From: Sphaerodactylus townsendi
Taxonomy: Eukaryota
DNA length: 64,000 nt
Direction of reading: 5' to 3'
Assembly (NCBI RefSeq): GCF_021028975.2
Contig: NC_059426.1
Coordinates: 79,298,001 to 79,362,000 of the forward strand
Part shown: positions 1,479 to 45,424 of the stretch, in pieces
Layout: each line of letters begins with the position of its first letter
Position numbering within the stretch: position 1 is the first letter of the stretch
Made by a program: the position numbers and the translations under genes
Notes under the pieces: generated by a model
What the model was told of the DNA's origin: nothing
The model's input: only the letters and a program-made list of their open reading frames with translations
The model's database searches: none

Positions 1479-1933
1479 TCAGGCACCAAAAGAGAGAGAG
1501 AGAGATCTGAAGCTCTATATCTGTGGAGGTCTGAGGGAAAGTCTGAATCCCTGAGCAGATTTTCAAGCATTTGGGCAGTAAATGATCTAAAATATATCTA
1601 AAATACATCAAATAATCTAATCTAAATAAGCAAGAATGGAGGACATTTCAGAGGGTGATCAAGCTCCACAGCTGGACAAACATGGGTGATTAGAAGCCAA
1701 TTAAATCTTGTTAAACTTTAGTGTCAGGTTATGGCCCTAGTTATTAGACAGGTAACCAGATTCAGAAACAAAATATAATTTTCTTCCAGACTTGGGAAGA
1801 GGTAAAGTACTTTATATTTAAGGTGTATTGGAGCTCTTGCTTTTAAAAGTGTCGTAAAAAAATAAATTGATAAAAAGCAGATTCAATATAGCACTGGGAA
1901 AATCTTCAGTGTCACAATTTTTGGTTTTGTTAG

Positions 1934-2090
1934 GTCAACCCTACATCCTATTATGAGGCCTGTGTGACTGATTTCTGTGGTTGTGACAGTGGGGGAGACT
2001 CTGAGTGCTTTTGTACAGCAGTAGCTGCATATTCTTGGAGCTGCAGAACTGCTGGTGTCTGCATCGACTGGCGAACTCCAACAGCTTGTC
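1934..2090 (+). CDS. mucin exon A, C8-3 domain (VNPTSYYEACVTDFCGCDSGGDSECFCTAVAAYSWSCRTAGVCIDWRTPTAC)
   Basis: ttttgttag|GTC ... TGTC|gtaagt; 157 nt, phase 0 to 1; C8 motif WRTP..C. Confidence 0.95.
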
Positions 2091-5000
2091 GTAAGTATTC
2101 ACAAAAGAAATTTATGTTCAGAGGATGACTGAACACATAAAAGCAGAGCATTTAAAGCTTCTGGGTTCGACTCTTGAAAGACTACTTCCTCCTGTATTAT
2201 CCACTTTTCCCCTTAAACCAGCATGGTGTAATGGTTAAGAGCAGGTGGACTCTAATCTGGAGAACCAGGTTTGATTCCCCACTCCTCTGCATTAGCAGCA
2301 GAGTTTTATCTGGTGAAACAAATTTGTTTCCCCACTCCTACATTCCTGTTGAGTGACCTTGGGTTAGTCACAGTTCTCTCAGGTTTCTCTCAGCCATACC
2401 TACCTCACAATGGCCCCTTCCGCACACGCAAAATAATGCGTTTTCAAACCACTTTCACAACTGTTTGCAAGTGGATTTTGCCATTCCGCACAGCTTCAAA
2501 GAGCACTGAAAGCAGTTTGAAAGTGCATTATTCTGCATGTGCGGAATGAGCCAATGTTTCGGTTATGGAAATAGGAATTTGTAAGTCCCTTTGAGTCTTC
2601 TTACAGGAGAGAAAGGGGGTTATAAATCCAGACGCTTCTTCTTCTTAAGATCTGCCTCACAAAACCAACTCTTTGTGTCCCTGCCTTCAGAGATGAGATT
2701 GATGATGACAAGAGATAGTGGCACCTTGCTTTTTCCCATCAGGCTTGCCTGGTGTTTACCCTGCTTTCTTTTAGGCACCAGGCTGAAACATTGCCGTTCA
2801 CCCAGGCTTTGAACTAAGGAATTGATTTTTTTTTTACACTACTTTAGTCTGGAAACTGTTATTTTAAGCTGTCAGTGGTCTATGGTCTGTTTTTAAATGG
2901 TTGGCTGGCTTTTTAATGCTGGATTTTAACTAATATCTCTTAAAGTTTTGTTTTTATTATTTTTATTTTGTAATCCACTTCAGATAAGTTTCTAGACAGG
3001 GGGCATAATTTAATTAAATCAGTAAATATAAGGGCAGTGTGCATGGTCCTCCTGAAATTAATGGCTGAGATGCTGTGGTATATGCGTAAACAAGGGCAAG
3101 CCAGCAAGAGGTAGGGAAGAAGGATCCAAGTGAGAACCAGTGTTGCAAGGTACCTCCTGGCAACTGACGGGGGTGGTGGGTAATTTAGGGCCTCTGGTAT
3201 CTAAAACATAATGATGTTATTCACAACATGCAGTGGAACTGGCATCATCATGTCGCTGGCAACCACAGAGATGCTCTGCTATTCGGGCAGAACTATAGTA
3301 GAAGCAGTTTTTTGCTCAAATACCAAACTGTCCTTGCAATCATCAGCGCTGCAATGATGTTTATGGTGCACGTTGTTTATGGTGCACGTTTGTTTATGGT
3401 GCACGTTGGAAATGATGTCATCCTTTTTTGATGCCAGAAGACTCAGAGTAAGTTTGCTGCCCTACATTCTCCCACTGACTGGCTGAACAGCACTAAGTGG
3501 CAGGGCACCAGAACAGGGGGTCCCCCGCCAACAGTGACCCTAGTGAGAACTCAGACTTTACCAATTATGTCTGTTATGTCTGATAATGCAGCTGTATTCT
3601 GTGACTACTTTAACTCACCCAACAAAAAGGAGTGGCATTATAAACCCTGTGGAGATGCTTGTTTAAGGACTTGCAGAAATTGTGCAGGAAGGTGTGGCAA
3701 TCTACCGTATAGTTTGGAAGGTAAGTCTTATTGAAGAGCTTGCACATGCATATCATATAAAACAGTCTAAAATGAAATACGTGTTTCTGCTATGATTTGA
3801 CAAATGCAAGCAGACCTTTTTATTTCCACACAGAAAATCTGGCAAAGGTCAGTTGCCTTGAAGGTTAAATTGACTGTGCAAATTATTAAAAAGCAGTGGA
3901 TTCGAACAGTATGTGTTGTAATTCAAAGCCCCAATAGTCTCACTTTCCCTTTTTCTACTTTATAATAGTCTTCCATAATTCTACACAATAATCACTCTAA
4001 CTACAGAACTTGCTCATCTGCCAACATTATAGGTGTGTTTGAAGCCTGATCCCATGTTAGACATGTGATCTGAAATATAGACCATTTCTAAATAGAGCAT
4101 AATGCAAATTGTGTTACAAGCTGTTGGAGGGCAAGAAGACCTTTCCTGAGTGGTGGTGTTCATGCTCAGTATCTTTCTTAAAATATCCTCTTGTCTGTAT
4201 AATATCTGTATGCCTGGTCAACAGCCACCTGGATTGTGGATATCTGGTAGGTTAGTTATGCACAAAGCAGATGAAATTCTTGTCTTGTGGAGAAATTGGG
4301 CACATGAGAAATTGTACACGTAATGTCATCTTATCTGTTAGTATATATTGAAACCAAGCCTCAGTCTTTGTAATCTCAGAATTCTCCCCCTTGTCTCTCT
4401 CTTTCTCTTTTCACCATCACTATGACAGCCATGAGCTTAAGTGCCAATGTGGATCTTTATTTTCAACAAAATAACCCCTGGGTTTCCAGAAGCTGAAGTA
4501 AAAAAATATGTTTACTCAGGATTATATTTATATAACCCAGTCTTTATATTTTCATCCCAAAATGTACTAGATAATTTATACTCTAATAAGGGTAGAAAAA
4601 TATTTGTTCTACAGTTCATACATTTTCCACTTTAGTGATTAATCTTTGTGTCAGAGAATATTATGTGTGAAATAGCCTGAGCTCAGCTTCACAATAGAAT
4701 TAAGAGGATCACTTTTACAGCAACAGATACATAAAAATAAATAGAAGCTTTAATTATTAGATTGGTTGTTTCACATTCTATTTTTCTGGCACCCACACAC
4801 TCAATGCATTCTTCCAATGCAAGTTGTATGCTTCCATCAGCAGAAAATCCTCTTGCAACAGAAGGATAACATTTGTGCTGAAAGTTGTAAGCCCTCTGAC
4901 CAATCCTATAAAATATATATATTTCTCACAGCAGTATATTTTCCTTTAAAAATCATATTGGCAAAAGCCAGTTGCCAAAAGCACTCCTATGGGTGTAGGT

Positions 5001-8000
5001 AGCCGCATGATCACCTGACCACAGCCAAAAGGTCAAAACTACTTTAACAAAAGCTAAGATAATGAGTTACCCCAGCATAAACCTGGAGGTCTCATTTGAG
5101 TAACTAGAATGCTTGATTACCTCACCTTGCAAAGATACTGTTAACAAAGAATATGGAAAGCCACCTCAGCATCAGATTCTGCATTTCCCTATCTCTTCTG
5201 GAAGCCAAGTAAGCAACAAAGGGTTGCTTCTCTGCATTTCCCTCCCTTTTGTCATGACTGTCCTAAAACCACTTACCTCATCCTGAATCAATCAAGCCTC
5301 ATTCAAATCTGAAGGCAGAGACTGTAAGAGTTACTTTGCCTAAAGCCAGTCTGTGCTTCCTGATATAATCTAGGACCAATTGACTCCCATTGTCCCGGGT
5401 TTAGCAGTAGACCAGCTGACTAATGACCTCAGCACCCCCAGACCCAGCACAGATGTGAAACGTAGTGTGATTGGTTCCTTTCCCATCAAGGAACAACCCA
5501 CCTTATAAAAGTTCAGTTTACCTGCAACATATTGCTCATTTGCCACATGTTCCTGTCTCTGTTGAGACATGAATTCGTCCTCCATTGGGTTCCTGTGCTG
5601 GCATGGAATCCCTGCCTTCTACTTCTACCCTCCTAAGAATCGTTAGGTAAAGTATTTCCCTGAAACCCCCCCTCCATTTCTATCTCCAATCTATATTTTT
5701 AACACCTTTCTATATCTTAGGAACTTGAATGTATGTGCCCTTGTGTCTTACTGGGTGTGTGTATTTTTAAACAAATTTATATAAAGCATTTAAATTCAAT
5801 TTGGACTCTTGCTTCTCTGTGGAATATCCATTGCTAGAATTCCTTCCCCGTAGATACAGTCTAAAAGATCTCCTCTCGGCCCCTCTCGCTGCCAACGTGA
5901 GTGTTCATTCCCCATTGATCTACTTGTAAAAACTATATGTGTGCTGTTACACTTTTTAGCAGCTGGTGGAGAATCCCTTTAATAAAACCCTTACTCCTGT
6001 TAAGGCCGTAACAAAGTTCATGCTGGGCACACAGGCAGAAACAGAATGGAATGCATAGCATCCATGCTGTCAGTATAATTTTATGGGCCGTGCAGTCTGA
6101 TACCATGATTATTCAGAAGGAAATCCAATTGAATTCAGTGAGGCTTTTTCTTAAGTACATGCATAGGAATGGAAAATTAACTACTTTCATATTTCTTTGA
6201 AAGAATATTCAGCTAATCTGACTTGAATTGAATTAGTACAACTTGAATTGAATTAATTTGACTGAGCTGAATGTTTTTCTATATGTTGTAATCCACCCTG
6301 GGTCTCAGTGAGAAAGATAGGCTATAAATAACCATTCCAGGACAAATTCTCTTTTAACTCATTCTTATGTGTATCCCTATTATTTTATATAGATTCCATA
6401 AAGTTTAAATTAGTGGATTGCAACATAGAGTCTTAGAAGGTCTTCCAAAGTTTAAAATCCAATTATATGTAATTATTACCTATTATGGTTGGTAGAAGCA
6501 ACATTCAGTACAGAATGGAAGGATCTAGCAAGAAGTGTCTGTCTTCTTATCTTTATTATAAGTCACTTCATATTTCATCAAGAGAAAGCTGTACTGTTAG
6601 AAATTTGTGTCCACTAGATGTAAAGGAGAATTATTCTTTGCTTGTTTCCAAAATAGGCTGCTATCCACAGTGCGGTGGTGATAAACCATATTATGATGAA
6701 GAAAAGAGAGAATGTGTCTCAGCATCCAAATGCACTTTGTGGTAAGTGACTTCTCTTGGTATAGATCCATGATCCCAAGTGTGCTGTGCATGGGGACTAT
6801 GCCCATCAATATTTTTTTTGGTGTCTATTTTCTTCTTTCCCAAAACATATTATCCCCAGATTAAAGTTAATCCTGGCTTTCATCCATCTCTTTGAAAGGT
6901 CCTTCAGAAGTGTCCAGGATTGATCCCCTATCTGTCTGCAGAGAGCAATCATATAAAAATATATTTTTCCAAGGTTAGCTTAGGTTCCCAATATTTGATC
7001 ATAGGACCCAGCCACCTTGGCAGCCATTTGATGTTTGGCTGTACCCCCCCCCCCGCCCCCCGACAACCATTAGATGCTGGTGCCCACTCAATGTTCTCAA
7101 ATTGGTAAAAGTGCCCACAGATTCATTAAGGTTGGGGACTCCTAGTATAGATTATTGTGTCATGAGCATACTTGGACTTTATTAGTCTGCAAAGGTGAGG
7201 TTTCCACCAGATTCTTCCAAGGGGTGGAGGAGGGGTGTTAGAGGAAGATTATTTTTATTGCATTTAAAATGTAGACACTGAATTATCAATGGTATTTTGT
7301 GTTTTATTTCCCCCCAGTGAGCCAGAGGAAAAACTGTCCTTGAAAGATTCCACTGGTAAGATTTACAGTGGCAGCTCCTTATTCATTATTATTGTAATAT
7401 ATAAAACATAGGATATTTAGAATCTGAGAGCTTGGAGACTTCTGTTGAAGTTTTGCCTCTCCATAGATTCAATTAAACTTCCACAGTCAAGTTGCTTCTT
7501 TTCAATTATCAAAGATGTCCTTCACAGAACACTGAATTTCGCTTGATGAAAAAAGCAGAAAAAGTCATCATAGTCCCCAAACCCCTAACTCAACTGTGAC
7601 CCATTACCATTTCAGTGACTGCACCAAAATGTCTGAGGCTGACGAAAATGGTGACATACTTTGCTTACATCCATGGATCAAAAAGTGTTCCTACAGTTCA
7701 GAAAATAAGACGAGGACTCACCTGGTAGCTGCTGGTTGCTGTCTAGGAGGGAGAGTAGAGGAGTGGACAGGGAGCCAAGGCAACCACATGATGCCCTTAG
7801 GGCAAACCATTGGCTGGTTGGTGCAAGCCATGCAGCCCTCAACCTCCTTGTTCATTGCAACTGGCCACTTTAGAAACCAAATAAGACTGCACATGATTTT
7901 AGCTTCCACCTCCAATTTTAAAAACCTCATGTGTCTGGGTAAACAAATAGAATTAGGTATAACACACAATGAAAATGGACATTCATTATTGTATCAATTA

Positions 8001-11000
8001 TGGTTTTGGTATGTGAACAGCTGAGAGTCAATTTGATAGGCTGCGCAAGAAAGTTAGAGGTTTGAACCTACTAACATGAAGTGAAAGGTCTTTCCTTCAT
8101 TCCTCTTTTAGCAGCATTCTGTTTTACCAAAAAACTTACGCTGAGAGTCAGGAGACCCTTATCAGCATAGGAACAGGTGGCTACAGCAAGGAGAGGGAAG
8201 TAGATGAAATTTTCTTGTGTGAATGGAAGTGCCCAGTTATCCACCAGTTATGTTCTGTTGGTCATCATCTTCTGTTCATCACCTCACCCTATTTGCCCGG
8301 GACAGCCACTGTTCCTCCCCTTAACCTACCTACAGAGATATGAGATAGAATGAAGAAGGAATACCATACGTGTCATTCTGTCCTCCTAGGAGGAAGGGTG
8401 AGATAAATGTGTACTAGACAGATAAATAGATGTGTTAGTTTTAGGCCACCACAGAATGCTCAGTGGTGTTTGTAATGCACAATGTGGGGAGGGAATGTGA
8501 CTCTAGTTATAGAGATACATTAGCTCTATATAGAATGATTGGACCCCACCAATCTATTTCATAAGCACTTTCCACCAGTCATGGAGCCTTCACCCAGACA
8601 AGCCTTCTGTGGCGGGGAAGTCTGGAGGAAGGCACCACAGCTAGTGGAATGAATCCATAGGATCCAACACAGTCTCTTTTGCCATTTAATTGGGCTTCCA
8701 TGTGAAAAACAAATAATCCCTTTGTGGAGCATCCAGGTAAGTATTGCATGACTTGAATTCTTGGCCACGGCATATGCTTAAGGAAGAGTTATGATGTAGG
8801 TTCATTCTGCTAGGAGCTGCTGCTTCTCTATTTATTACACTGAGGTTTAAACTGGATAGTTTCTAATTCTGTTTCTAATTCTTTTAGGAAATAAAGCAGT
8901 GCTTCCCACAACCTTACCAGCAACAACAAAAATTACAGTTGCCCCTTGCTACTGTAGTGTAAATGGAAAGCTGATAACTAGTGGTAAGAAAGTTACATTT
9001 GAAATTTATTTCTTAAATGATGCATAATGGATTAGATCCAGAGTAAACTTTCCCATGGGTATAAGGTCTTTCACCTATGGAGTGGGATTTCCCCATCATT
9101 CCCCCATCATTCCCCAACCCCCATAACACCCCCAAATATCTCCAAATTCTATTTCTGGGGAAGAGACCCCCAGAAACAGGACTTGGGTTCATATTTTGTG
9201 TTGCTTTGGAAGGAAAGAAGTGGGATCGTTGTATTCTGTGGGCCATCAGGAAATGTTAGTCTGGACCTAAGCCATATTCTCTATAGATACTATTTATTAA
9301 ATAACAATTCCAAATTGCAGCTACACTTAATTGATTTTTAAAAAATAATCATCACTCATTAGTGTAGGGGTTCCCAGTGTGATGTCTGTGGGTGCCATGG
9401 CACCCCCCAAAACCTTTCCAAGTGCCTGTCAAGTGATTTAGAAAGTGAGAGAGAGTGCTGATTGGTTGTTGTAGATTCGATCGGATGTACAGATTTTTTT
9501 GTAAATGTTGCTTTTGCAGCAGCTGCTACCACAACCAAGGATTTTCACTCTCTGACTAAATGTAAGCTGTGGCAGCCGTTTTAACTGTCCACCCAACATT
9601 GTCAGAATCCCAAAGGTGCCTCCAGACTGAAAACAGTTTTGTACCTCTGAATTTGTATATCTATGCATTTATAGGTACAGTGGTCCCTGGTTAGTATTTC
9701 AGAAAAATATTTAGATGCATACTTATAAATTGCACCAAAAATGCATGTATTAGACTATTTGCTTGTTGAACAAATTGTATCTCTCTCAACTTGTGTGTGT
9801 ATATTGAGCCCAGGGACAAAATCTAGCTGTTTCTATTTATAGATGGCATGGGTAAATAGCTTCTTAAAAGTTGGATAACATGCAAGACTCATGTATGTGT
9901 TTACTAACTATTTTTCTGGATTTTTAGGCAGTAGTGAGTTTGTGACAATGGATACTTCAGATTGGTGTATTTATGCCTTTTGTAATATGTCATGCCAAAT
10001 TGAATTCAGCTATGGAGAATGTTCCTTTACCACCATCACCACTAGCAAACCTTTCATGACCTCCAGCAGCCCTTGTAAGGGAAATTTTTGGAACTGTCAG
10101 AGTAATCCTCCTCCCTATGCAATAATAACATCTGATTCCACACTTACTTCTGTGAGCGGTTGCACAAATCTCAACCCTCCTAGAAAGGTGAGCAAATAAC
10201 ATTACTGAATGTATAAGTACAATGGAACAATATTGTGAGTGCCCTTTTGCTGGCCACCCCTGCAGGGTAGGCCTCCTTGGCTACCCTTCTGGAACACGAC
10301 TCTGGCTTCTGTTCATAAGCTCTTTACTTCTGTCAGGTAGTTAACAGCACTCCTGCAAGCTTGAGCTCCTATACTACACCAGCATCCTCCCTCTTGCCCT
10401 GCCTCTCCTTTATCCCTTTCAGGAGATTCCCTCCCTCCTGGTAGCCCCATGGTCCAGCCTGCTAGTGGCTGGTGAGCTGTCTGTCTTGCCTTGCTGCCAT
10501 GAGACTGGCTCTTCAGCCTTCCTGCCCTTCCTCCTTGATTGCAGCCTGGCTGAACCTGTGACAGTTGACCCCGCTGCACTCTCTAAGGCTGCTGATTGCA
10601 GCTTGTCTCAGGCTGTGTGCCTCCATCCCATTCCCTGGAACTTCAGAGGCTTGCTCTTGTTTCTTAGGCTCCCCTTTCATTTCTCTGCTGTTTCTTCTTA
10701 CTGCTGGCTTCCTGGAGGTCCCTACTCCTTGTAGTAAATCTAGGGGTGGAGCTGTCAGTTGTGGGGTGCTCCAGGGTCCCTGGGTAGGCATTTGTAACAA
10801 GGAGGGGGTAAAACAGGCTGCTGGATGCTGGGAGGCAGCCCTGACCCTGGACAAATTTTGAAAATGTGTATAAGTTTGTGTGCCCCTTGTCTGGACTAAA
10901 AAAAAGATATAAATAAATAAATGTTGCTGCCACAGGCCATAACAAACTTACAAGACAATGCCCCCATTGAAAACACAATACAAGAGTGCTGCTGTTAAAA

Positions 11001-14000
11001 AAAATACAATCCACACAAAGTGAAACTTCATAGAAGAGGTACTCAGTGCAAATAACTGAAAAGCATATGACGGTTGATCAAGTTTGATCACATTTGGCCG
11101 GCCCTAAAGCAAAAATTGCAACCTTTTGAAAGACCCTCTGTTGAACATTTGCAATTTAAAAAATCTAACTTTGGTTGTTTATAAACCTTCTCACAATTAT
11201 GTTCCGTAATTCCACTTTGTACAACACCTAGCATATTCATGGCTACGTATTCTAGTGCCCAGAAACTGGTTTCTCAACAACTTGCTCTATCAGAAATGCA
11301 AGTGGGGAGAACAATAAGTTTGACTCAGTGCAAGCAGATAGCACAGACTTTTTATTGCATTTCTGCTTATGATTATTTACGTATATATGTTACTATACAC
11401 TAGATGTAAATTGTCCTTGTTGTATTATGTTGAATAATGGAAGGACAAGGTATACCCATTTTAAATACATCATCAAAATAATAAGGCATAGCAATGTACA
11501 CTAATTCCATTGTTGTTGCTGTTTTTACATATCAACAGTTTCAGGAGTCATGGAAATTTGGAAGCTGTCAAGTTGCCACTTGCTTAGGAAATGGAAATCA
11601 CATTAAAATATCTGATGTGCACTGTCCACCTCAAAAGTCAGAACACTGCATCAATGGATTGCCATCAATAAAAAACCATGAAGCATCGGGTTGTTGTGAG
11701 GTTTTTGAGTGCCAGTGTAAGTGATATTCAAATAAGGACCTGCATTTCACAGTGCACTTATATCAAGCTAAAATGATGCGCAATATCACTTCTGGTGTAG
11801 TGGTCTAATTCAGTGTACAATAAAAGTGTTGTTATCTGGCAGTAACAATGAATGGGATTTGCTGGTTAATCAATATAATAAATATACTATGTAATCAATA
11901 TACTATATTCTATATACTCAAGATTATTGCCATGCCCTGTGTAGGGGGACACAGAAAAAAATTGCAGAGTCCAAATCCTACCCCACTGTGGGAGCACTTT
12001 GGCAACATACCTGGTGGCATTATTTCTCTCCCGCCCCCCCCGCCCCCCCCCCCGCAAAGTACTGGGCCATCTTACAGTCAAGCAGGGAGACAAGTGGGTC
12101 AGCTACTTGGGAGCCATCGGGCAGAGTTGGCTTCTTGTGGCTCAAGACAGGCTGAGGGGGAAAGAGTCACCTGAGATGTTCTCAGCTGAAAGCACCCTCT
12201 GTTAGAAGCATAGCAACAGCTCAGAGCATCTGGAGAGGTAGGAATGGCCAAAGGCACGGGAGTTTGAGGGCTGAGGGAAAGACCTTGCTCCCCTGATCCC
12301 AGTTAACTCAGTGTTCTGGATATCTAAGTACTGGGTAACAAAGTTTTTACTGTATAATAGACAATGTAGGACAATGTACTACTTCTGTAATGTGTAATGT
12401 TTAGGAGTTCAGTAGCCTTAGCTAATCCCCTATTTTCAAAATTTGCTACAGTTGGTGGTTTTGACTCACATGCCACTTTGGTGGTACAGTTTTAAGCACT
12501 GAAATACTAATGTGCAAAGTAACATTGAAATACTAATGTGCAAAGTAACATAGACCAAAGTAACATTTAGACAAGCCCAAGGAAATATTATTCAGGAATA
12601 AACACAAACATCATTTTGGTGGAGCAAAAAACACATTACTGATGATAAGTGGAATATCAAAAACAATAATTAAAGAAGAATGTTTTAAAGAGGTTTAATT
12701 ATGTGGGTTGCAAACCACGATGAAATGCATGAATACAAAGTTGTGTGGTATGAAAGTGCAGAGATAAAAACGTCAAGGCTCCACCTGCCCACAACAATAA
12801 CAAAAAACAACACAAAACATCAATTCAATTCATTGGACTTAAGAGGCTGCCCCTCCCCTTCAAGGCTTGGGGCAGCTAACAACCTACTATTAAAACACAT
12901 ATAACAAAGCTTAATTAAAAAAAACCCAACATCAATCCATTGATTCAAAAGAGAGTATAGGGTTGAGTGCTAATAATATTTGGAACTGGGGGTGATTATA
13001 TAAGTAGTGATTACATAGAGTATATTAGTAGGTGTGTGATAAAAAATATCTAAAACTCACAGCTGTTCTAAGAGATTTCAGCTTCATCAAACAATGCTTT
13101 TGCCTAAAATTGCATCTGTATTACTGAGCAATGCCAACGAAATGTCAGCCGCAGTTTAATAATGGCAGAAGGCGAAGGAAGTTAATTAATTTATAACTAA
13201 ACTCCATGGAACAGCTGGTGTTGTGGATAGCTAAGATTCAACAATTCTAATTCAAACTGGAAGTTATTTGGGTCACTCACTTGCAGCCTCACTTCAGCCA
13301 CCTATAATATCTGGATTAGAGATGCTTTCAAATTTCTCCCTTCAGTTTGGGATTTCCGATTACCTAACTTATTTGTTCTAAGGTACAACTGATGAAGTGG
13401 AAATCTTTTTTATTCTTTTTTTTTAATTTCAGGATTTTGTACAGAGAACGGAACATATAAATCTTGCCAGAGAAATGAACTTATAAACTGAACATTAATT
13501 TCTATAATTTCATTTGTGTCTTTTCACTACCTCTGTTATGCTATTTTCCTTTTTTTAAAAAAAATAGCTTGGTTGGCTGAGCCTAATTTTCACATTTGGA
13601 AAGGGGGAATCCATCTATTACTAACTGAAACCTTTATGTATCCTTTGCTGGCAGAATTAGTTTTAGAAATTTTCCTAATTAAACAAGACTACAGAAGCAG
13701 CTCAGTGTACTGGTTGTCATGGGTTTTCTGGGCTGTGTGGCCGTAGTCTGGTGGATCTTGTTCCTAACGTTTTGCCTGCATCTGTGGCTGACATCTTCAG
13801 AGGTGTACAACAGAGGGAAGTCTGTTACAGAGCTCAGTGTAGGACACAAACTGGGGAAACCTGCTAATTCTTAACTGAAATAGTAATACTGGCTTATCTT
13901 ACAGGGCTCTTTCAGGTCAATGCTCAATGTGAAGCCCTTTGATAAATTGAAATATGCTAAATAATTATTAAGATACCACCATGATAGTTTTGCAGATAAT

Positions 14001-17000
14001 ACTTGCCTGCTTGCCAGTGATAAATACGTATCTCTTCTAGGCAGTTAGGCAAATAAAGTTCTGTACATTGGTAAAGAGCTCTGTGTGTGGATTGCAGACT
14101 AGTTGTGGGTGGGTAATCACAAAAATTTTGTTGTGCGTGCACAATGACAATAAAATGCTTATGCTTATACTATGATGATGCAGAAAAAGGTAATGTGTTG
14201 ATACTGATACATTTATGATGCCTTCAGTAAGTCCACTGGTGCATTACCTTGTTTTCCACAAAGCCCTGTTGCAGTGCAGTTGTCGCTGTTGTTTGTGTCA
14301 TACTGTCACCTGAATTATGTGGGCTGATCTATGAAGGGATTGTATACTGAAGGTCCCACCTTGTTGTTGGAAGTTGTATTTGTTGGAGGATGTGATAGAC
14401 TTTCAGTCCAACCCAATGACTCCCTTGTTCTGACTTTGATAAGTTAATTTGTGCTTTCCAGGTACTTGCAGTGGATGGGGAAATCAACACTATATAACAT
14501 TTGATGGGTCCTATTATAATTTCCGTGGGAATTGCACCTATCTGCTGATGAAACCAATCAGACCTGGTTTTCAGAACTTCTGGATCCAAATGGATAATTA
14601 CTATATTGCTGCCATAGATAGAGCTGTTCACTCCATGAGCCTTTTCATACATTACAACCACTCTACGATTGTTTTGACACGAGGAGCAGAGGCTGGAAAA
14701 GAAGGCAACCTGGTAAGACATTTATTAGCTTCCTAAGTATCCAAAGAAAAACACAAATCAAAACTTGAGAGCACAGCATACCTCACAGGGTAGACATTTC
14801 CTGTTTCCTGTTTTTGCTACAGCCCTTAATTGCAAAAAGAAGTGGCTCCTGAGGGAGTATGGTGATCTCAAGAAATGTGGGTGGTGTGACTTTTGGAGGC
14901 TGTACTGTGAAGGACGAAATCAACAAAAATCTCTCCCTCTACGCTTGCATGACTAGAAATGCCCTTCTACTCAGAATTTGAGTAGGAAGAGAAATTTCAG
15001 GATAAAGTTGTGACAAAACTGCTGGGTTTTTTAATACGTTGTGACCCACCCAGAGCCTTTAGGGATAGGGCAGGATATAAATCCAACAAAATAAATAAAT
15101 AAAATAAAATTGAATACATAATGTTCAATAAGTGACAACTCCTCTACCTCCTCCATCTAGTTCAATAGCTTATTTAGTACCCCAAGGAGAGAGAGATTTA
15201 GGGGGAAATTGAAAGACCTTATCCATGGATGTCCAATAATACAGAGGGCTGGGTGCCTGGGCAAAAAATATTAGATTCCTTTTTTCCCAGCTAGTGCATT
15301 TACAGTGATCATGATTTTATCATAGCATGTGATTAGGCAACAGCTGCTGGTACTTATTGAACAGTGACTGTCACCATTGTTGATGAGTGATTCAGCTACC
15401 TCCTACAGTCCTTTGTCCATCTGCGGACACCTTTTCCTTGTTTGCTTTAATTTCTTTACAGATTGTGCTTTCCTCTTTTTACCAAATGGGGGAGTCCTCG
15501 CCTAGCAGATGCAGGTGGCAGATCTGCCCCTCCTCTTGCCTCCATTTTATGAATGTTTGCATTTTTAAAGCTTTGTATGCTCTTTTATCTTCTGAGTTTA
15601 CCCCAAAAGGGGTAAACAATACAAGACAGTTAGAATAGTTCCGTATTTTTATCACTGTGGCTCCAATTTATGAGGCTATTTCAAGGATCCCATTGGGTTA
15701 TTCTAATTCTTCCATATTTTAAAGGTTCTTTTCAACAATAAAGAAATTGTTCCAAGTTATTCTCAGGAAGGTATTGATGTCTACACTTTTGGTCAATACG
15801 TTGTGATTAAAATACCTGAAATTGGACTTTTGGTCTCCTATACTCACCTTGCTTTTTATATAAGCCTTCCTTTCAGCACTTTTTATAACAACATTGAAGG
15901 GCAATGTGGTAAGTGTTGTATTAAAGTATAATAATGGATATGTCAAAATAATCATGTCTTTTAAAATTGAAATTATCTTACTTGGATATTACTTTGTATT
16001 TAGAGCTCTGGAGTTGAGAGTGTGTGAGTTCTGTTAAAACATTATGTTAGTTGTCAGTCATCTCAGTGTGTGGTCTATGTTGTTATGTTGGACTGATTTT
16101 AATGCTGGATTGGGGACAGAAGAACTTACCGGCAGCAAACTGAGGCCTAGGCCTCTGACTCTGACAATATGACAATGCCGCTTCCAGTGCACATCAGAAG
16201 GGGGTGTCATCATGTCACTGGCACTGTGGGGACACTCTGGGCAAAAATCCTATGATAGAAGCTGTTTTTATTATGGAGTTTTGCTGAAACACCAGAGCAT
16301 GCATGTATCCACTGTCAATATGATGACATCGTATGATTCACCAGAAATTACATCACCATGTTGCCAGCAACAGAAGCCTAGGCCTCAGTTTGCTCCTGGT
16401 AAGACAGTAGTGGTCATTTATTTATTCATTTCAATTTATAGGCCATTTTTCCCCTTGGGGAAAGCAGAAGGAAGTTCCTTATATTTTAAACTGAAACGTA
16501 TACCAGTATGTCTTTGTTGCTGTTGACGTTCATATTGCCCTCTGAATATTACAATTTATTTACTCATTTTGTATACTGGTATTTTGTCCTTCCTTCAAGA
16601 AGTTTGGGATGACACACATACTTCTCCCCTTAATTTTGTAAGCTTTCCATAGGAAAAAAACTTCCTCCAGAGGTGGGATCCAGCAGGTTCTCACAGGTTC
16701 CCGAGAGTAGGTTACTAATTATTTGTGTATGCTGAGAGGGGGTTACTAATTGGTGATTTTGCCACATGATTTTTGCCTTTGTTACACCCCTTCTCTGAGC
16801 AGTAGCGAGCAGAACTTGAAGCAGTCTAGCAGGAGGTGCACCGGTGTGCGTGGCAGCCTGCGCCTGTGTGCATTCATTTCCCGCCCAAGGACCGGCGCAG
16901 TGGCTGCGTCCTTGCCACAGCCCCGCCCAGGAATGCCCCGCCCCCAGAAAGCCTGGCCATGCCCCCGTCATGCCCAGCCCAGCCCCATTGGCGCTACGCC

Positions 17001-19356
17001 ACAGTTTGAATCCCACCACCATGGGAACCTGTTACTAAAATTTTTGGATCCCACCACTGACTTCCTCCCATTATTTTCATTAATCATTAAAGTATTATAA
17101 GTTTGTACTATCTAGTAGATATATAATGGTATAGGAATTGCTTCTGTAAAAAATAGCAAATGAATCCCTGCCCCAAAAGCTCACATAAGAGTTTGAAGAG
17201 TTTGGATTTATATCCCCCCTTTCTCTCCTGCAAGAGATTCAAAGGGGCTTACAATCTCCTTGCCCTTCCCCCCTCACAACAAACACCCTGTGAGGTGGGT
17301 GGGGCTGAGAGAGCTCAGAAGAGCTGTGACTAGCCCAAGATCACCCAGCTGGCATGTGTGGGAGTGTACAGGCTAATCTGAATTCCCCAGATAAACCTCC
17401 ACAGCTCAGGCGGCAGAGCTGGGAATCAAACCCAGTTTCTCCAGATTAGATACACGAGCTCTTAACCTCCTACGCCACTTCTGCTCCATAAGGGAGACAA
17501 AGGAGAACCCTGAATTTTACAAACATATCTGGCCAAATATTACATTTTAACTGGGGACACGGAGGGACAACAGGGGGAAGGGGAAAGGGTTGCTCACCTT
17601 CAGGCAACAGACCCCAAATTCCCCTTAAATCCCCAAATCTCCAGGAGTTTTCCATTGGCTTTGGCAACCCTAGCATGGGAGGACATAGGGATTGAGGAAG
17701 GATCCAACTATTTACAACTTAAAATGAAGACTGTCACTGGATCGGAGCTTAGAAATGGAGAAGCAGGCTAAGAAATTTCCACTTTGTATTCTAAATTTTA
17801 AAGTGGTTATAATGTCTTAGCCTTTGCCCGAAGCCAACCTCTCACCTTTGTCAGGTACATGCACCAACAAGAAGACAGATGATGCAATGAAAAGGAATGG
17901 CAAAATGGCAGATTCCTTCACAGAGATGGCACTGAATTGGAAAGTGATGGACCTTGCTACTAGACACTGCGATTCAGGTCAACATCCAGCATCTTCTCAC
18001 CATAAAATGCAGTCATCCAGCATGGCTACCTGTGTAGTTCCTTCTATTTGTAAACTTATCTGGTAAGGTATATTTTTTTAGAAAAGCATGTTTCAAACAC
18101 AGACATTTTCTGGTGTAAATATGCGTGATGTAAATTATACACACAAAGTTAAATAGATCAATAACAAGTTAAATAGATGGCACATAAGCCTGACATTGTT
18201 ACTATCTAAGCTACAACAGTTCAATAGGTAAGAATCTGAGAACGGTATTATTATTTTGATAACACTATTTTTACTATCTTACACTGAATACCCATATATC
18301 AAGGCAAATAAATTCAGCCATTGTATTTGTAGGCAAATTGTTTTTTCACTTAATATCAAAACTAATAAACATTTCATATATCTTCTTCATACATTTTATT
18401 TTGTTTTGCCTTTGCCTTTGAGGTTTTGTTCTGTTTTGTTAATATCTGGTTATGTGTATTTGCTGTGAAATAAAATAATGTTTTTAAAATTAACAGAATA
18501 CATTAATGTACATTAAACACCAGCAGCATAGTTTAGTGTATAATCCTAAAGAACATGTAGCAGTAAATAATCAGTTCCTTCCCTAAGTACTCATACCAAA
18601 GTGTGTATGTGTGAATGTGTATATGTGTATGGTAATGACAGTCATTCATGCTAGTTGAAATAAATTTATATTTTAAAATATACCGGTATTTGTGCTGTAT
18701 CATCAGCATTAATTTCTCAACAGAGTTCAACAGTTTTTCAGAGTAGATCATTTTAAGATCCAGACTTTTCATAACCAATGTATTCTTATGATGTAGGGTT
18801 GGCAGACCCTTGCTGAGGACAGGGGATCTTCTGCTTTAGGACCCTCTCAGAGCTATCCAGCTGGTCAGTTAGGGGTCTTGCCAGGCCTAAAATGAGGCCT
18901 AGGCCTTGAAGTTTCAGGTGCAACGATGTCACTTTTGGCAGCAATGTCATCACAAAGGTGACAACAGGGAGATGGTCTGGTATTTGGACAAAACTCTATG
19001 GTAAAAACAGCTTCTGCCCTATGGTAAAAACAGCTTCTGCCCAAATACCAGAGTATCTCACTCAACATTGTTGACATGATGACAGCACTTTCAAAAGTTA
19101 CTTCAGTCAAAAGATGTTGAGGCCTGGACTTCATTTTAAGACTGGTAAGATCCCACTTACCTCTTCCCCACCAATGGCCGGGGTGGGGGGAATCAGGAAA
19201 TCCTAATATGATATCATTCATACTGTGAAAAAAGAGCCAGTGTGGAATAGTGAAAAAAGTTAGAATATTTTGACTGGGGAGATCCAGCTTCAGATATCTG
19301 CTAAGACCAGTCCTTTTCACTTAGCCAACTCTATCCTGTTGTGAAAATGGAGGGCG

Positions 19357-19401
<45 letters not shown>

Positions 19402-20295
19402 CACCCAGAACTCCTAGAGGACAGTACAAAACATTAAAAATAAATATTCTTCATTGAACAAGGAACTTAACAGAGTGTCATACTGCTGTCCCTCCACGTC
19501 CTTACTATGAGGCTTGTGTCATGGATGGATGTTCCCTGCCAAAGCAGAACACTGAATGCAGAAGTCTCCAGGTCTATGCGGCCATGTGTGGGTACCAAGG
19601 GATCTGTGTGGATTGGAGAAGCAAAACCAGAGGGAAATGTGGTGAGTTGAAACACTTCTCAGAAGTGGGACGTTGTTAGAGTTAACCAGTCTCAATGTGG
19701 GGCCAGGAGTTCTCCAGGAGTTACAACTGAATTCCAAACTACTGAAATCAGTTCCCCTGCAGGAAATAGCAGCATTGGACTGCAAATCCTAAAGCATTAC
19801 ATCTTCAGTTTCCTCTTCTTCTCAAACTCCACTTTGAAATAATGGTTTTTATATATTCCAGCTCTTTGGTCTGCTTACTTTTCAGGTTTCATTTTATATC
19901 TCCTACATATTGGTACTGGTATAAATCTGAACTTATCCTGTCAAAATGGGCAGAGTTCATCAGTGTAAATATAAGATAGAAAAACAAGAAAATTTCAAAG
20001 AATTTTAACAGATATGTGTGTTTACATTCCCACTAAACAAACATATATACCCCTCCCTATACAACATCAAGTGGATTCTACCGTCTCTCCCCTCTTTCTG
20101 GGATTAGAGGAACTGATCATAGATGCCATTCTTGTTTTAATACCAATTTTAATGCTGCTTTTAAGATGAGATAGGGTTTATTTTTAATTATTAGAGCCTG
20201 TATTTATTGATGCTGTGGTTTAAATTGTTATTGTGCTCTATCTGTGTGTGTTCACCGCCCTGAGCCCTTCGGGGGAGGGCGGTCTATAAACCTAA

Positions 20296-20350
<55 letters not shown>

Positions 20351-23300
20351 ATATATACACACATTTTAAAATGGACTAGAGATCGAGATGGACTAGTGAC
20401 AATCCTAGGTTCATTTTATTTATTGTATTTTTAAAAAAACTTGTCCACTGACAAGTTCTTATTTTAAGGAGCCTTGAAGAACACAGCTCTAGGACTTAGC
20501 TCTTCCTTGACAGCACTTTCCACCACCACCACCACCACCACCACCACCACCACCACCACGATTCAAAATGATGCAAAACTCTGTGCAAGCTTTTGCATTC
20601 TCCGGAAATCTTCAGCAGGCTGGATGCTTTTCAAGGAGTGTACAGTGGAACCTTGATGTTTGCCGGTAAAAGTAGTAAGGATGAATCTCATACAGTGCTC
20701 GGAACATTTGATGGGAAGAAAAAGGTTTAAAAACTAGTAGACAGAGTTATACTATTGACTTCAGTGGACTTAGAAGGATGTAGCTCTGCTCTGCTTAGGG
20801 TGATACTTGAGAGCCAGTCTGTATAGTGGTTAGATCAGAATCTGCAAAACAAATCTTAAAAGTGAGACTGAAACAGATCCATTTCTGTTGGGTGGTACGC
20901 TGAAGTTAGCAAATGCAAAAGAGAAGAAGGTTCTTATCTCTCAAGAGCTGCTAATGTTTCCATCCTAAGTTGTACCATCTGGCATTTTACACAGCTGTTA
21001 AAGCTACAAGATCTTTGACCTCCTGTGTATCAGGTTGTTTTGTTTGGTGCAGATATATAAGCAAATTATGACATGCCAAATACTAACACTGTTTTTTTAA
21101 AAGCAAGTAGCATGACCTGGAAGCTTTTATAACTGTGATGGATTAAATATACAGTTATTTAGAACAGGTAGTCTAACATTCACTCATGTATGATTTTCTG
21201 TAGCTGTGACCCTGCCCCTAGCAAGTGACTCTAGAGTTCTTCACTTTCAGTCAAGGTGATCATGATTAAGGAGACATTTCCAGAGATGCATAGAATTACA
21301 GGCCTAGTGAAGCTTCCACAGGCTGTTGTGCCTTCCTATAGTCTCTGGGCTTTGACTGGCCTTTTATACTGTCTCCAGTCTGGAGATAATTGACATATAA
21401 ATCAGATAGGGGTTTTGAAAGAGTTGGATTTTTTAAAAAGAAGAATTTGCCCAATAATGGTTGTTTAATATGTGCTAGAATATTTCAAGATGCAAAGTAA
21501 GCTTTGCTACTGCACTGTCACTGTTCATCTTAATAGACCCTTTGGAAAAGTCCCACTTAAATGAATAAAGAATATCTCTATGCTTTCCTACAAAGAAGGG
21601 CTCTTTCATATGTCTCACACAAGAAGGTCTGCTCTGCCTATATGAATAGAAGTAGACAGTTTCCTTTAAGTTAAAGTGGATGGAGTCTTATCAGTAGAAA
21701 TTACTTCCTACCATTTATTATTCATTTAAATAATTTATGCATGGAAATGTAAAATTGGAATACACATAACTGAAATTTCTAAATGTGTCACAGAATTCAC
21801 ATGCCCTCAAGACCAGATCTACAAACCATGTGGGAAAATGGAAAGACTCACATGCTATAATAGGTGAGTGATTTATCAAGGCAGGGGTCCCCAACACTGA
21901 TGCCATAGAGCCTGCCTATACGTTTTCTGGCATTTGCCTAGGGTTGCTAGGTACATCCTGGCAACCAGTAAGGGAGGGGATCTTACCAGTTGGTTCTGGT
22001 GGGTTTTCCGGGCTGTGTGGCCATGGTCTGGTGGATTTTGTTCCTAACATTTCGCTGCATCTGTGCCTGGCATCTTCAGAGGTGTATCACAGAGAAAAGT
22101 CACACACACCAGGACAACTTCAATAAGAAAGAAGAGACGTTAAAAATTAGCAAAGCCTGGCTCCCAGTACTTAAAAATGGACTGATAACCCCACCCGCAA
22201 TACAATACACTCAACCACACCTTTGCATAGCAAGTTCCACCCAAATACTTAATTATTGGTTCCCCACCCTGGGACATGGACAATATACCACACTAAACTT
22301 TCCCTTCTGACGTAGACACAGTGTGAAACAGACTTTTCTCTGTGATGCACCTCTGAAGATGCCAGCCACAGATGCAGGCGAAATGTTAGGAACAAAATCC
22401 ACCAGACTATGGCCACACAGCCCGGAAAACCCACCAGAACCAGTTGAATCTGTCCGTGAAAGCCGAGAATACATTGAACGGATCTTACCAGGTTTAAAAG
22501 GGAGGCTTACACCCCAGAGTCACCAACATGATGACAACATGATGACATCATCCTGCTGGCTGACCTTGGGCCAGTCACAGTTTTCTCAGCCACGAGGAGG
22601 CAGGCAATGGCAAATCACTTCTGACTGTCTCTTTTCCTGAAAACCCTATGGAGTTGCTATGAGAACTGTGATTCAATTATGCTTTCTACCACCGCTGTGA
22701 TCAGAGCTATACTGAATTTTTACCCTCAGACATCCTTGAGATTAAAAAAAAATGTTTTTGAAGTAATATGAAAAGCACCTCTCAATTGTTCAGCTATGTT
22801 CATGCCTATTCACAGCCTTTACTCAAGCTCTTCCGTTTTTATAGTAATTTCAACCATTATGCTCAGATATGCTGATTAGCTGGGGTCACAGTTATGTGCC
22901 CCCAGCTAGTAGAAAACAATCATGTAATAAATGTGATGGCATAATGGAATTGAATAACCAATCACATAACATCACTGAGAGTATGCAAAGCCAATTTACC
23001 CTAAAAGGTGTAATCAAGCTCTGGTCACATTAGAATGTACATTGCAATTAATATTTTGATACATAATGATATGGAATGTATCAGAAGGCATATTCATGCC
23101 AATGAGGCAAGGCAACTTCAGCACCCAGATGCATTTTAATGTACAACAAAATGGATATGCATCATATTTAGCCACACTAGGCCATGGTGATTTCATTGCC
23201 ACACTACATTACACAGCAGGGTGCATTGGCCCAGATGCAAAGACAATGAGTTTGTGTACCTCCTGCCTCCACAAACATATTTGGGGTAGCTCTCCAAGAT

Positions 23301-44700: not shown

Positions 44701-45424
44701 GGCCAGGTCCATCTGCTGAACTCCAAGAAAGTCCCGGAGAACAGCGGTCTTATTATTTATGGACCTGGCATTTATCAGCACCAAAGACGAAGCAGGGTGT
44801 CTCTGAACCCAGCCACCTTTGTCCCTTGGGATAGGTCGGAGGTCAGAAGGTGAACGAGCATGACCATATCTCGTCCACCTTCTCTCATATGGCCGCCGCC
44901 TACCGTCATACTTGCCCCGTCCCATTAACACTGGGATCCCCAACCCCAAGGAAGGTGCCCCCATCCCCGCTGTCCCCTCCTAACCCAACCCCGGCAACAA
45001 CTCTCCACCGTAGGTGGACTCAGCTCGCCACTAAATTAACTAATCTATTTAAAACTAACACTAAACAGTACAATAAGCAAGCTAATACAAATATACAAAA
45101 TTACCCACTAACTAATCTAAGCTAATCAGTTTATCAATTAATTAATCAATCAATTAATAACCGCAATAGGGAGGGAAGAGATGGTAGACTCGACAGTAGA
45201 ATGCAGCTCAGCCTCTTGGTGTCTTCAGTGATATTTATGTTATTATATGCCTCTATTGCAGCTGCAGTGGGGCCTCTTGAGGTATTAAAAAACCAGGCCC
45301 CTAAAGATGACAAATATAGCCACGCACCCCCTGGCGGCCTTAGACTGGCCACCAAGGAAAAAAGCAAAGGCAGCAAACAGCAATAGGCAAAGAACCCAGC
45401 AAGTTGGAAACCTCTGCCACCCGT
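41757..45424 (-). mobile_element. young, apparently full-length L2 LINE (APE endonuclease + RT), single ORF with one frameshift
   Basis: ORFs 42367-44964 and 42003-42599: NARS, TETW, GDFN, TLDL, SDH (APE); QSGFR, LDLTAAFD, GVPQG, YADD (RT); (AATA)n tail 41757-41788; putative TSD tatctt at 41751-41756 and 45425-45430; CpG retained. Confidence 0.93.
42003..44964 (-). pseudogene. L2 ORF2 (endonuclease/reverse transcriptase), broken by a small deletion near 42620
   Basis: the frame switches at SLAPAPS|HLDSSLSM, where L2 ORF2s carry a V.xLGV segment; no internal stops otherwise. Confidence 0.88.

What the first reader, a model, noticed from the sequence alone, without database searches (positions are those of the whole stretch)
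1934..3720. Gel-forming-type mucin lacking BOTH D3 inter-chain cysteines: predicted unable to polymerise the canonical way
Seen: exon A reads GGD-S-ECFC (TCT at 2000-2002, one base from TGT) and exon B reads NSPNK-K-EWHY (AAG at 3627-3629). Established: in MUC2 the Cys of GGDCECFC (C1088) and of HECEWHY (C1130), equivalent to VWF C1097 and C1142, form the head-to-head D3-D3 disulfides needed for linear polymers. As I recall it, chicken ovomucin alpha has lost only the second. The ORF is otherwise intact and the dimerising cystine knot keeps 11 Cys. Inference: this protein would stop at C-terminal dimers, act as a chain terminator or non-covalent partner for other mucins, or use a different linkage. 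This is the best candidate for an undescribed system in the window.
Basis: partly seen in the sequence, partly recalled or inferred. Interest (0 to 1): 0.85.

Follow-up and report, generated by a model that had tools for sequence, protein, structure and literature searches.

The report
Gecko ovomucin-alpha lacking both linking cysteines
This is the gecko version of ovomucin alpha, an egg-white mucin-like protein; it has really lost both cysteines that normally link such proteins head-to-head, making it a rare, lineage-specific variant of a known family rather than a new system.

Summary
Exon A (1934-2090) reads GGD-S-ECFC (TCT, 2000-2002). Exon B (3592-3720) reads NK-K-EWHY (AAG, 3627-3629). 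Ungapped alignments to solved MUC5AC, MUC5B and MUC2 D3 assemblies put the Ser and Lys at the MUC2 C1088 and C1130 positions.

The gene is not a true gel-forming mucin. It is the 3' part (C8-3 to the cystine knot, 22 exons, ending at 37699) of the gecko orthologue of the ovomucin alpha-subunit, which has no PTS domain.

- **Second cysteine:** absent in all 17 ovomucin-alpha orthologues examined (birds, turtles, alligator, tuatara, lizards).
- **First cysteine:** lost only in geckos (Euleptes, Paroedura and this window).
- **Not an error or a pseudogene:** independent contigs match exactly. Paroedura uses a different Ser codon (TCA). dN/dS is 0.27, and 94 of 97 conserved cysteines are kept.
- **Rarity:** among 221 D3 assemblies scanned, only gecko ovomucin lacks both.

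These may compensate for each other, or the new one may form a new link.

The protein most likely stops at cystine-knot dimers with at most non-covalent head contacts. It is a new variant of a known kind, of moderate interest.

The parts
1934..2090 (+). Exon A: end of C8-3 of the D3 assembly (VNPTSYYEACVTDFCGCDSGGDSECFC...WRTPTAC)
   Evidence: 86.5% identical to Euleptes P0168 residues 1070-1121
2000..2002 (+). TCT = Ser at the MUC2 C1088 (VWF C1097) position
   Evidence: 0 differences in the organism A contig; Paroedura has TCA
3592..3720 (+). Exon B: start of TIL-3 (P)VFCDYFNSPNKKEWHYKPCGDACLRTCRNCAGRCGNLPYSLE(G)
3627..3629 (+). AAG = Lys at the MUC2 C1130 (VWF C1142) position
   Evidence: this site is non-Cys in all 17 ovomucin-alpha orthologues
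3681..3683 (+). TGT = gecko-specific extra Cys in TIL-3 (CRN-C-AGRC; Pro in all other orthologues)
6657..6741 (+). Exon C: end of TIL-3 (GCYPQC...RECVSASKCTL, ends with TG of a split Cys codon)
7318..7355 (+). Exon D: (C)EPEEKLSLKDST. Ser stands where other orthologues read EKL-C. The next exon found in turtles, birds, Pogona, Varanus and Hemicordylus (CLCCYNKK..., 6 Cys) is absent from intron 7356-8886.
8887..11716 (+). Three short linker exons (8887-8983, 9928-10187, 11539-11716) between D3 and D4; there is no large PTS exon
14467..24702 (+). D4 assembly exons (VWD4, C8-4, TIL-4; limits taken from alignment ends). Ile 14605-14607 and His 14629-14631 replace a C-x7-C pair lost together in geckos.
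26785..34682 (+). VWC-type C-terminal exons (limits taken from alignment ends). The assembly gap 27886-28025 lies in an intron and no exon is missing.
35881..37702 (+). Cystine-knot exons (35881-35997 and 37538-37699, 11 Cys) and TAA stop at 37700-37702

Best explanation
The window holds the 3' part (C8-3 of D3 through D4, the VWC modules and the cystine knot) of the gecko orthologue of the ovomucin alpha-subunit. This is the mucin-like gene without a PTS domain that lies beside MUC2 in birds and reptiles.

Its D3 assembly has neither of the two cysteines that make the D3-D3 inter-chain disulfides in MUC2, MUC5AC, MUC5B and VWF. The C1130-site cysteine was lost before the sauropsid ovomucins diverged. 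The C1088-site cysteine was lost on the gecko stem. The gene is functional and under purifying selection.

Inferred mechanism: the protein still dimerises tail-to-tail through its intact 11-Cys cystine knot, but it cannot be concatenated head-to-head through the canonical disulfides. The product would be a covalent dimer. Its D1-D3 heads could at most associate non-covalently, as the MUC2 double mutant does when it forms filaments at low pH.

The gecko-specific gain of a Cys in TIL-3 together with the loss of the Cys after TIL-3 is most simply read as a swap of intramolecular partner that leaves no free thiol.

Shown here: identity, orthology, the substitutions and their phylogenetic distribution, and selective constraint. 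Inferred: oligomeric state, pairing of the new Cys, and site of expression.
For: - **Position in D3:** ungapped alignments to solved D3 assemblies place Ser and Lys at the two inter-chain sites.
- **Gene structure:** 22 colinear exons match Euleptes 'mucin-5B-like' P0168 residues 1070-2067 at 85% identity with no stops. Only four short exons lie between D3 and D4, so there is no PTS exon.
- **Domains:** P0168 has 4 VWD, 4 C8, TIL and VWC domains.
- **Orthology:** the 17 PTS-less orthologues form a clade with 100 SH-aLRT support, with geckos sister to the other squamates (quick tree).
- **Site states:** site 2 is H/R/S/K/Q in all 17. Site 1 is Ser only in the two geckos and the window.
- **Constraint:** dN/dS is 0.27 over 595 codons against Paroedura, with dS 0.32 and Ser codons TCT versus TCA. 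94 of 97 conserved Cys columns are kept, and two of the three losses are a local pair lost together.
- **Assembly motifs:** the CGLCG motifs of D1 and D3 are kept in the gecko orthologues.
- **Interface:** MUC2 interface residues G1085, G1086, D1087, P1114, F1120, D1122, Y1123 and H1133 are kept in exons A and B.
- **Experimental precedent:** MUC2 C1088A/C1130A is entirely monomeric at the head yet still forms filaments at low pH (PMC7599080).
- **Cysteine parity:** relative to the other lizards, geckos show net changes of -1, +1 and -1 in D3 and the linker, consistent with going from one unpaired Cys to none.
Against: - The new TIL-3 Cys (3681-3683) could be free or could form a new inter-chain bond. 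Its pairing was not testable with these tools.
- No RNA run holding the stretch was found, so expression and tissue are unknown.
- D1, D2, D' and VWD3 of this species lie outside the window. They were judged only from the Euleptes and Paroedura orthologues.
- The parity argument depends on domain boundaries and on predicted protein models.
- One 85%-identical contig in run X5 over exon A could not be read at the codon.
Confidence: 0.65

Rival explanations
1. Polymerisation is kept through a different linkage. The gecko-specific Cys in TIL-3 (CRN-C-AGRC) is unpaired and forms a new D3-D3 or D3-partner inter-chain disulfide that replaces the lost ones.
For: The Cys is gained in all three gecko lineages, on the same branch as the loss of the C1088-site Cys. 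TIL-3 then holds 11 Cys, an odd number. TIL-3 carries the C1130 interface in MUC2 (PMC6739602).
Against: The gain coincides with loss of the Cys after TIL-3 (EKLC to EKLS), which fits a partner swap. The overall parity change suggests no free Cys. The His/Arg cluster around the old TIL-3 disulfide has decayed in ovomucins. There is no structural evidence that the new site lies on the two-fold axis.
Confidence: 0.2
2. The protein acts as a chain terminator or non-covalent partner inside polymers of another mucin, for example MUC6 (beta-ovomucin), rather than on its own.
For: Hen alpha- and beta-ovomucin form a mixed disulfide-linked linear polymer (PMC8279891). Beta-ovomucin is MUC6 (PMC1552070). 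The cystine knot here is intact.
Against: Without D3 cysteines it cannot join a partner head covalently. Cystine-knot heterodimers between mucin paralogues are not documented, as far as I know. No expression data exist for geckos.
Confidence: 0.1
3. The gene is decaying (relaxed constraint or pseudogene), and the cysteine losses are part of that decay.
For: Squamate eggs have little albumen (my own knowledge). Several other lizards have lost the middle Cys of the CxCxC triad. An exon with 6 Cys is absent in geckos.
Against: dN/dS is 0.27. 94 of 97 conserved Cys are kept, and a disulfide pair was lost cleanly as a pair. All 22 exons are open with canonical splice sites. Three gecko lineages keep the gene.
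Confidence: 0.03
4. TCT at 2000-2002 is an assembly error or a rare allele.
For: It is one base away from TGT.
Against: An independent contig matches with 0 differences at depth about 66. Ser is present in Euleptes and Paroedura, and Paroedura uses TCA.
Confidence: 0.01

Closest known systems
Ovomucin alpha-subunit of birds and other reptiles (chicken alpha-ovomucin; annotated 'mucin-5B-like')
   Same: Orthologous clade. Same architecture: D1-D2-D'D3, short linker, D4, VWC, cystine knot, and no PTS domain. The C1130-site Cys is absent in all members. The CGLCG motifs are kept. (PMC4948705, PMC1552070.)
   Different: Birds, turtles, alligator, tuatara and three lizards keep the full CECFC triad, including the C1088-site Cys. 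Geckos have Ser there, plus a new TIL-3 Cys, loss of the Cys after TIL-3, loss of a 6-Cys exon and loss of one VWD4 disulfide.
Engineered MUC2 D1D2D3CysD1 C1088A/C1130A double mutant (Javitt 2020, PMC7599080)
   Same: Both inter-chain D3 cysteines are absent. The mutant head is entirely monomeric but still makes pH-dependent filaments. This is the best functional model for the gecko protein.
   Different: It is a laboratory mutant of a PTS-bearing intestinal mucin. Here the changes are natural, old, and accompanied by other cysteine changes.
MUC19 (Javitt 2019, PMC6739602)
   Same: A natural family member that lacks the C1088-site Cys.
   Different: MUC19 also lacks the C1090-site Cys and is locally divergent. 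It is a PTS-rich mucin and a different paralogue. It is not reported to lack the C1130 site.
Ovomucin-alpha of skink, lacertid, teiid, anguid and monitor (C-E-[F/S/R]-F-C)
   Same: Same gene. The CxCxC triad is reduced to two Cys and the C1130-site Cys is absent, so these proteins probably also have no free D3 thiol.
   Different: They lost the middle Cys (MUC2 C1090, which pairs with C1082), not the first. The first Cys would have to flip inward, as proposed for VWF C1097 in the C1099A mutant.

Membership tests
Ovomucin alpha-subunit (PTS-less mucin-like protein) | Architecture D1-D2-D'D3 ... D4-VWC-cystine knot | tested here: met
   The window exons cover C8-3, TIL-3, D4, VWC and the cystine knot, colinear with P0168 residues 1070-2067. 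Pfam on P0168 finds 4 VWD, 4 C8, TIL and VWC. D1 to VWD3 of this species lie outside the window.
Ovomucin alpha-subunit (PTS-less mucin-like protein) | No PTS (mucin) domain between D3 and D4 | tested here: met
   Between 6741 and 14467 there are only four short exons (38, 97, 260 and 178 nt) with brief Thr/Ser/Pro stretches.
Ovomucin alpha-subunit (PTS-less mucin-like protein) | Falls in the ovomucin clade, apart from MUC2 and MUC5 | tested here: met
   The 17 orthologues form a clade with 100 SH-aLRT support (quick tree, D3 region). The window is 85% identical to gecko P0168, against 52-66% to non-gecko ovomucin-alpha orthologues and about 40-48% to MUC2/MUC5-type mucins. The window itself was not put in the tree, because its exons were not joined.
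Ovomucin alpha-subunit (PTS-less mucin-like protein) | Lies between MUC2 and MUC5AC | tested here: inconclusive
   In Paroedura (L001) a 3399-residue VWD/C8/TIL gene ends 8.4 kb upstream on the same strand. In the window, the 26 kb downstream holds no mucin exon.
Ovomucin alpha-subunit (PTS-less mucin-like protein) | Secreted by the oviduct into the egg | not testable with these tools
   No RNA run holds the stretch. No paper on gecko ovomucin was found.
Disulfide-polymerising gel-forming mucins and VWF | Inter-chain Cys at the MUC2 C1088 and C1130 sites in D3 | tested here: not met
   Ser and Lys stand at these sites.
Disulfide-polymerising gel-forming mucins and VWF | Large central PTS domain with CysD modules | tested here: not met
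   No such exon is present.
Disulfide-polymerising gel-forming mucins and VWF | C-terminal cystine knot with 11 Cys for tail-to-tail dimers | tested here: met
   4 + 7 Cys in exons 35881-35997 and 37538-37699.
Disulfide-polymerising gel-forming mucins and VWF | CGLCG motifs in D1 and D3 | tested here: met
   Present in both gecko orthologues. This part is outside the window.

The most novel reading that the evidence does not exclude
Squamate ovomucin-alpha may have given up covalent head-to-head polymerisation several times by different routes. Geckos lost the C1088-site Cys. Skinks, lacertoids and anguimorphs lost the C1090-site Cys, so the remaining Cys turns inward. This would turn a polymer-forming egg protein into a plain dimer as squamate eggs lost their albumen. 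Alternatively, geckos may have re-created an inter-chain link at a new TIL-3 position. Either outcome would be a natural series of 'mutants' showing which D3 disulfides are dispensable for assembly in mucins and VWF.
Probability: 0.3. Interest if true: 0.6.

Novelty: new variant of a known kind. Interest (0 to 1): 0.45.

Why it matters
The two D3 disulfides turn mucin and VWF dimers into polymers, and so far they have been probed only with engineered mutants. Gecko ovomucin-alpha is a natural, selectively maintained protein with the full D1-D3 assembly machinery and an intact cystine knot, but with neither cysteine. Other reptiles offer intermediate states: one cysteine kept, or the triad reduced in a different way. 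Together they form a ready-made comparative series. It can be used to test whether non-covalent D-assembly packing is enough for function, how a spare cysteine is absorbed, and how egg-coat proteins changed as squamates reduced their albumen. It does not reveal a new kind of system.

Tried and rejected
- **Spliced protein:** Exons were searched one at a time by reference, and full-length gecko orthologues (P0168, P0169) served as proxies.
- **D3 homodimer prediction:** Complex prediction on two copies of Euleptes D3 (residues 860-1195) gave no verdict, with score 0.00. This is not evidence for or against binding.
- **RNA evidence:** The look-up of sequencing runs returned no RNA holder.
- **Relatives in reads:** in runs X4 (organism B) and X7 (organism D) no difference is listed at either codon. 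The difference table is truncated (192 rows not shown, and differences seen only in X7 seem to be omitted), so this is weak support. In X5, one contig only 85% alike covers exon A and its codon could not be read.
- **Missing 6-Cys exon:** a search of the window intron 7356-8886 and of Paroedura L001 gave only chance-level hits.
- **Downstream MUC5AC exons:** none in 38-64 kb.
- **More gecko orthologues:** the two full-length searches returned only Euleptes and Paroedura.
- **R1043 and W1046 interface sites:** mapping them by assumed ungapped numbering gave K and L in all orthologues. I do not trust that mapping and do not use it.
- **Earlier notes:** a search by place returned nothing.
Full report
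**Observation**

On the + strand, exon A (1934-2090, AG/GT bounded) translates to VNPTSYYEACVTDFCGCDSGGDSECFCTAVAAYSWSCRTAGVCIDWRTPTAC. Exon B (3592-3720) translates to (P)VFCDYFNSPNKKEWHYKPCGDACLRTCRNCAGRCGNLPYSLE(G).

phmmer against all PDB sequences aligns both exons without gaps to the D3 assemblies of human MUC5AC, MUC5B and MUC2. It aligns them more weakly to D1, D2 and FCGBP units. The Ser lies opposite the first Cys of GGDCECFC, and the Lys lies opposite the Cys of EGQCEWHY. In the MUC2 chains the two sites fall at chain indices 1068 and 1110. That is 42 residues apart, the same spacing as C1088 and C1130.

Javitt 2019 (PMC6739602) shows that these two cysteines make the D3-D3 inter-chain disulfides. 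MUC2 C1088 aligns with VWF C1097, and C1090 pairs within the chain with C1082.

**Is the sequence right?**

- Logan contigs of organism A cover 1500-2243 and 2973-4910 with no difference, at word depth 66-76.
- In related organisms B and D no difference is listed at either codon. The table is truncated, so I count this only as weak support.
- Two annotated gecko proteins (Euleptes europaea P0168 and Paroedura picta P0169) have the same Ser and Lys. This is stronger evidence.
- In the Paroedura genome (L001) the codons are TCA and AAG. The Ser is therefore old enough to have changed synonymously.
- One X5 contig only 85% alike over exon A could not be read at the codon. It remains unexplained.

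**What the gene is**

A whole-library HMMER search with exon A alone, followed by tblastn of the hits on the window, picked out one 2034-residue tortoise protein as by far the best match.

A region-restricted search with that protein returned a set of roughly 2000-2200-residue proteins annotated 'mucin-5B-like'. They come from turtles, birds, alligator, tuatara and ten lizards.

The window is colinear with Euleptes P0168 from residue 1070 to its last residue 2067. It spans 22 exons from 1934 to 37699 (TAA stop at 37700), at 85% identity, with no stop and with canonical splice signals.

Between the end of TIL-3 (6741) and the start of VWD4 (14467) there are only four short exons, so there is no PTS domain. 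Pfam finds 4 VWD, 4 C8, TIL and VWC domains in P0168.

In a quick maximum-likelihood tree of the D3 region, the 17 PTS-less proteins form a clade with 100 SH-aLRT support on a long stem. Within it, geckos are sister to the other squamates.

This is the ovomucin alpha-subunit family, which Lang 2006 and Lang 2016 described as a PTS-less mucin-like gene in birds, turtles, alligator and Anolis (PMC1552070, PMC4948705).

In Paroedura, a 3399-residue VWD gene lies just upstream on the same strand, as expected for MUC2. The 26 kb downstream in the window holds no mucin exon, only a LINE.

**Distribution of the two losses**

| Site | State across the 17 ovomucin-alpha orthologues |
|---|---|
| C1130 site | Non-Cys in all: His in turtles and birds; Arg in alligator and most lizards; Ser in tuatara; Lys in Anolis and geckos; Gln in Varanus |
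| C1088 site | Cys in all except the two geckos, which have Ser like the window |

The second loss is ancestral to the family. The first is specific to the gecko lineage. The window, Euleptes and Paroedura are roughly equidistant (85%, 80% and 84% identity), so they represent three gecko lineages.

Among 221 D3 assemblies matched by a motif scan, only gecko ovomucin lacks both cysteines.

Five other lizards (Tiliqua, Zootoca, Salvator, Elgaria, Varanus) kept the first Cys but lost the middle one of the CxCxC triad, reading C-E-[F/S/R]-F-C. Javitt 2019 proposes that in the VWF C1099A mutant C1097 flips inward to take the vacant partner. By analogy these lizards probably have no free D3 thiol either. 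That is my inference.

**Is the gene alive?**

- dN/dS between the window and Paroedura is 0.27 over 595 codons (dS 0.32).
- Of 97 Cys columns conserved across orthologues and covered by the window, 94 are kept. The three losses are the C1088 site and a C-x7-C pair in VWD4 that was lost as a pair in all geckos.
- The CGLCG motifs of D1 and D3 are intact in the gecko orthologues.
- This is a maintained gene, not a decaying one.

Across the whole protein, geckos differ from six other lizards in cysteine content at five positions:

1. Loss of the C1088-site Cys.
2. Gain of a Cys in TIL-3 (TGT at 3681-3683, CRN-C-AGRC; Pro in all other orthologues).
3. Loss of the Cys just after TIL-3 (EKLC becomes EKLS, exon 7318-7355).
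4. and 5. Loss of the VWD4 pair.

A following exon with six Cys, present in turtles, birds, Pogona, Varanus and Hemicordylus, is also absent from the gecko introns.

TIL-3 thus has 11 Cys in geckos. Relative to other lizards, the net change in D3 plus linker flips the parity from one unpaired Cys to none, or to two. The simplest reading is a swap of intramolecular partner. A new free or inter-chain Cys cannot be excluded with these tools.

**Mechanism**

- **Shown for relatives, inferred here:** the 11-Cys cystine knot makes tail-to-tail dimers in the ER.
- **Shown for MUC2:** D1-D3 heads pack at low pH, and the C1088 and C1130 disulfides then lock D3 pairs. The C1088A/C1130A head is entirely monomeric on non-reducing gels but still forms filaments (PMC7599080).
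- **Kept in the gecko protein:** much of the non-covalent interface, namely G1085, G1086, D1087, P1114, F1120, D1122, Y1123 and H1133.
- **Decayed across ovomucins:** the His/Arg cluster around C1130 (H1128 and R1166 equivalents).
- **My conclusion:** covalent dimers that cannot be concatenated through the canonical route, with at most reversible head contacts.

Hen alpha- and beta-ovomucin form mixed disulfide polymers (PMC8279891). A gecko alpha-subunit could not join such a polymer by its head.

**Novelty**

I found no paper on gecko ovomucin or on the D3 cysteines of ovomucin in the searchable library. The family, the domains and the role of the two cysteines are all known. MUC19 already lacks the C1088-site Cys. 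This is a new variant of a known kind, and a useful natural counterpart of an engineered mutant. It is not an undescribed system.

Noticed in passing
P0164, P0165, P0170, P0166, P0173 (Tiliqua, Zootoca, Salvator, Elgaria, Varanus ovomucin-alpha): The middle Cys of the C8-3 CxCxC triad (MUC2 C1090, partner of C1082) is replaced by F, S, S, F and R. Hemicordylus, Pogona, Anolis and Phrynosoma keep it. On the species tree this implies at least three independent losses.
   Followed up: partly
P0286 and P0295 (porpoise MUC5AC), P0227 (elephant seal MUC5B): These marine-mammal mucins read GGD-R-ECFC or GGD-S-ECFC. They lack the C1088-site Cys but keep the C1130-site Cys.
   Followed up: no
window 14605-14607 and 14629-14631: A C-x7-C pair in VWD4, conserved in all non-gecko orthologues except tuatara (His at the first site), is replaced in the window (Ile and His) and in both other geckos. 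This is a clean loss of a disulfide pair.
   Followed up: partly
window 7356-8886 (intron); L001 about 54.9-58.4 kb: The exon encoding CLCCYNKK...CGPGGN...C (6 Cys) after TIL-3 is present in turtles, birds, alligator, tuatara, Pogona, Varanus and Hemicordylus. It is absent in geckos, and it is missing from the predicted Anolis, Tiliqua, Zootoca and Elgaria proteins. In those four it may be a cassette exon or a real loss.
   Followed up: partly
window 42003-44964, minus strand: A GC-rich LINE: an 865-residue ORF with endonuclease and reverse-transcriptase features, followed by a 198-residue ORF in another frame. It explains the GC peak at 42-46 kb.
   Followed up: no
window about 2218-2790 and 4812-6100: Interspersed repeats in the introns (a SINE with a tRNA-like head at about 2218). 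Summed word depth reaches about 10^5 to 2x10^7 in all four runs, so they are very abundant in these genomes.
   Followed up: no
window 1857-2126, run X5 record 16: One contig of organism C covers exon A and its flanks with 39 differences (about 85% alike), while the other X5 pieces listed match the window (0-1 differences). It could be a paralogous copy, a second species in the sample, or a divergent haplotype. The codon at 2000-2002 in it could not be read.
   Followed up: no
window 1946 and 2049: Relatives differ inside exon A. T>C at 1946 (Ser5 to Pro, the state in other geckos) is seen in organisms B, C and D. C>T at 2049 (Thr39 to Ile) is seen in organism B.
   Followed up: partly
window 27886-28025: A 140-base N run (assembly gap) lies in the intron between exons 27185-27289 and 29844-29885. 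The orthologue residues continue without a break across it, so no exon is hidden there. The gap was not filled.
   Followed up: yes
window 19325-19414: A (GT)n microsatellite lies just upstream of the C8-4 exon.
   Followed up: no
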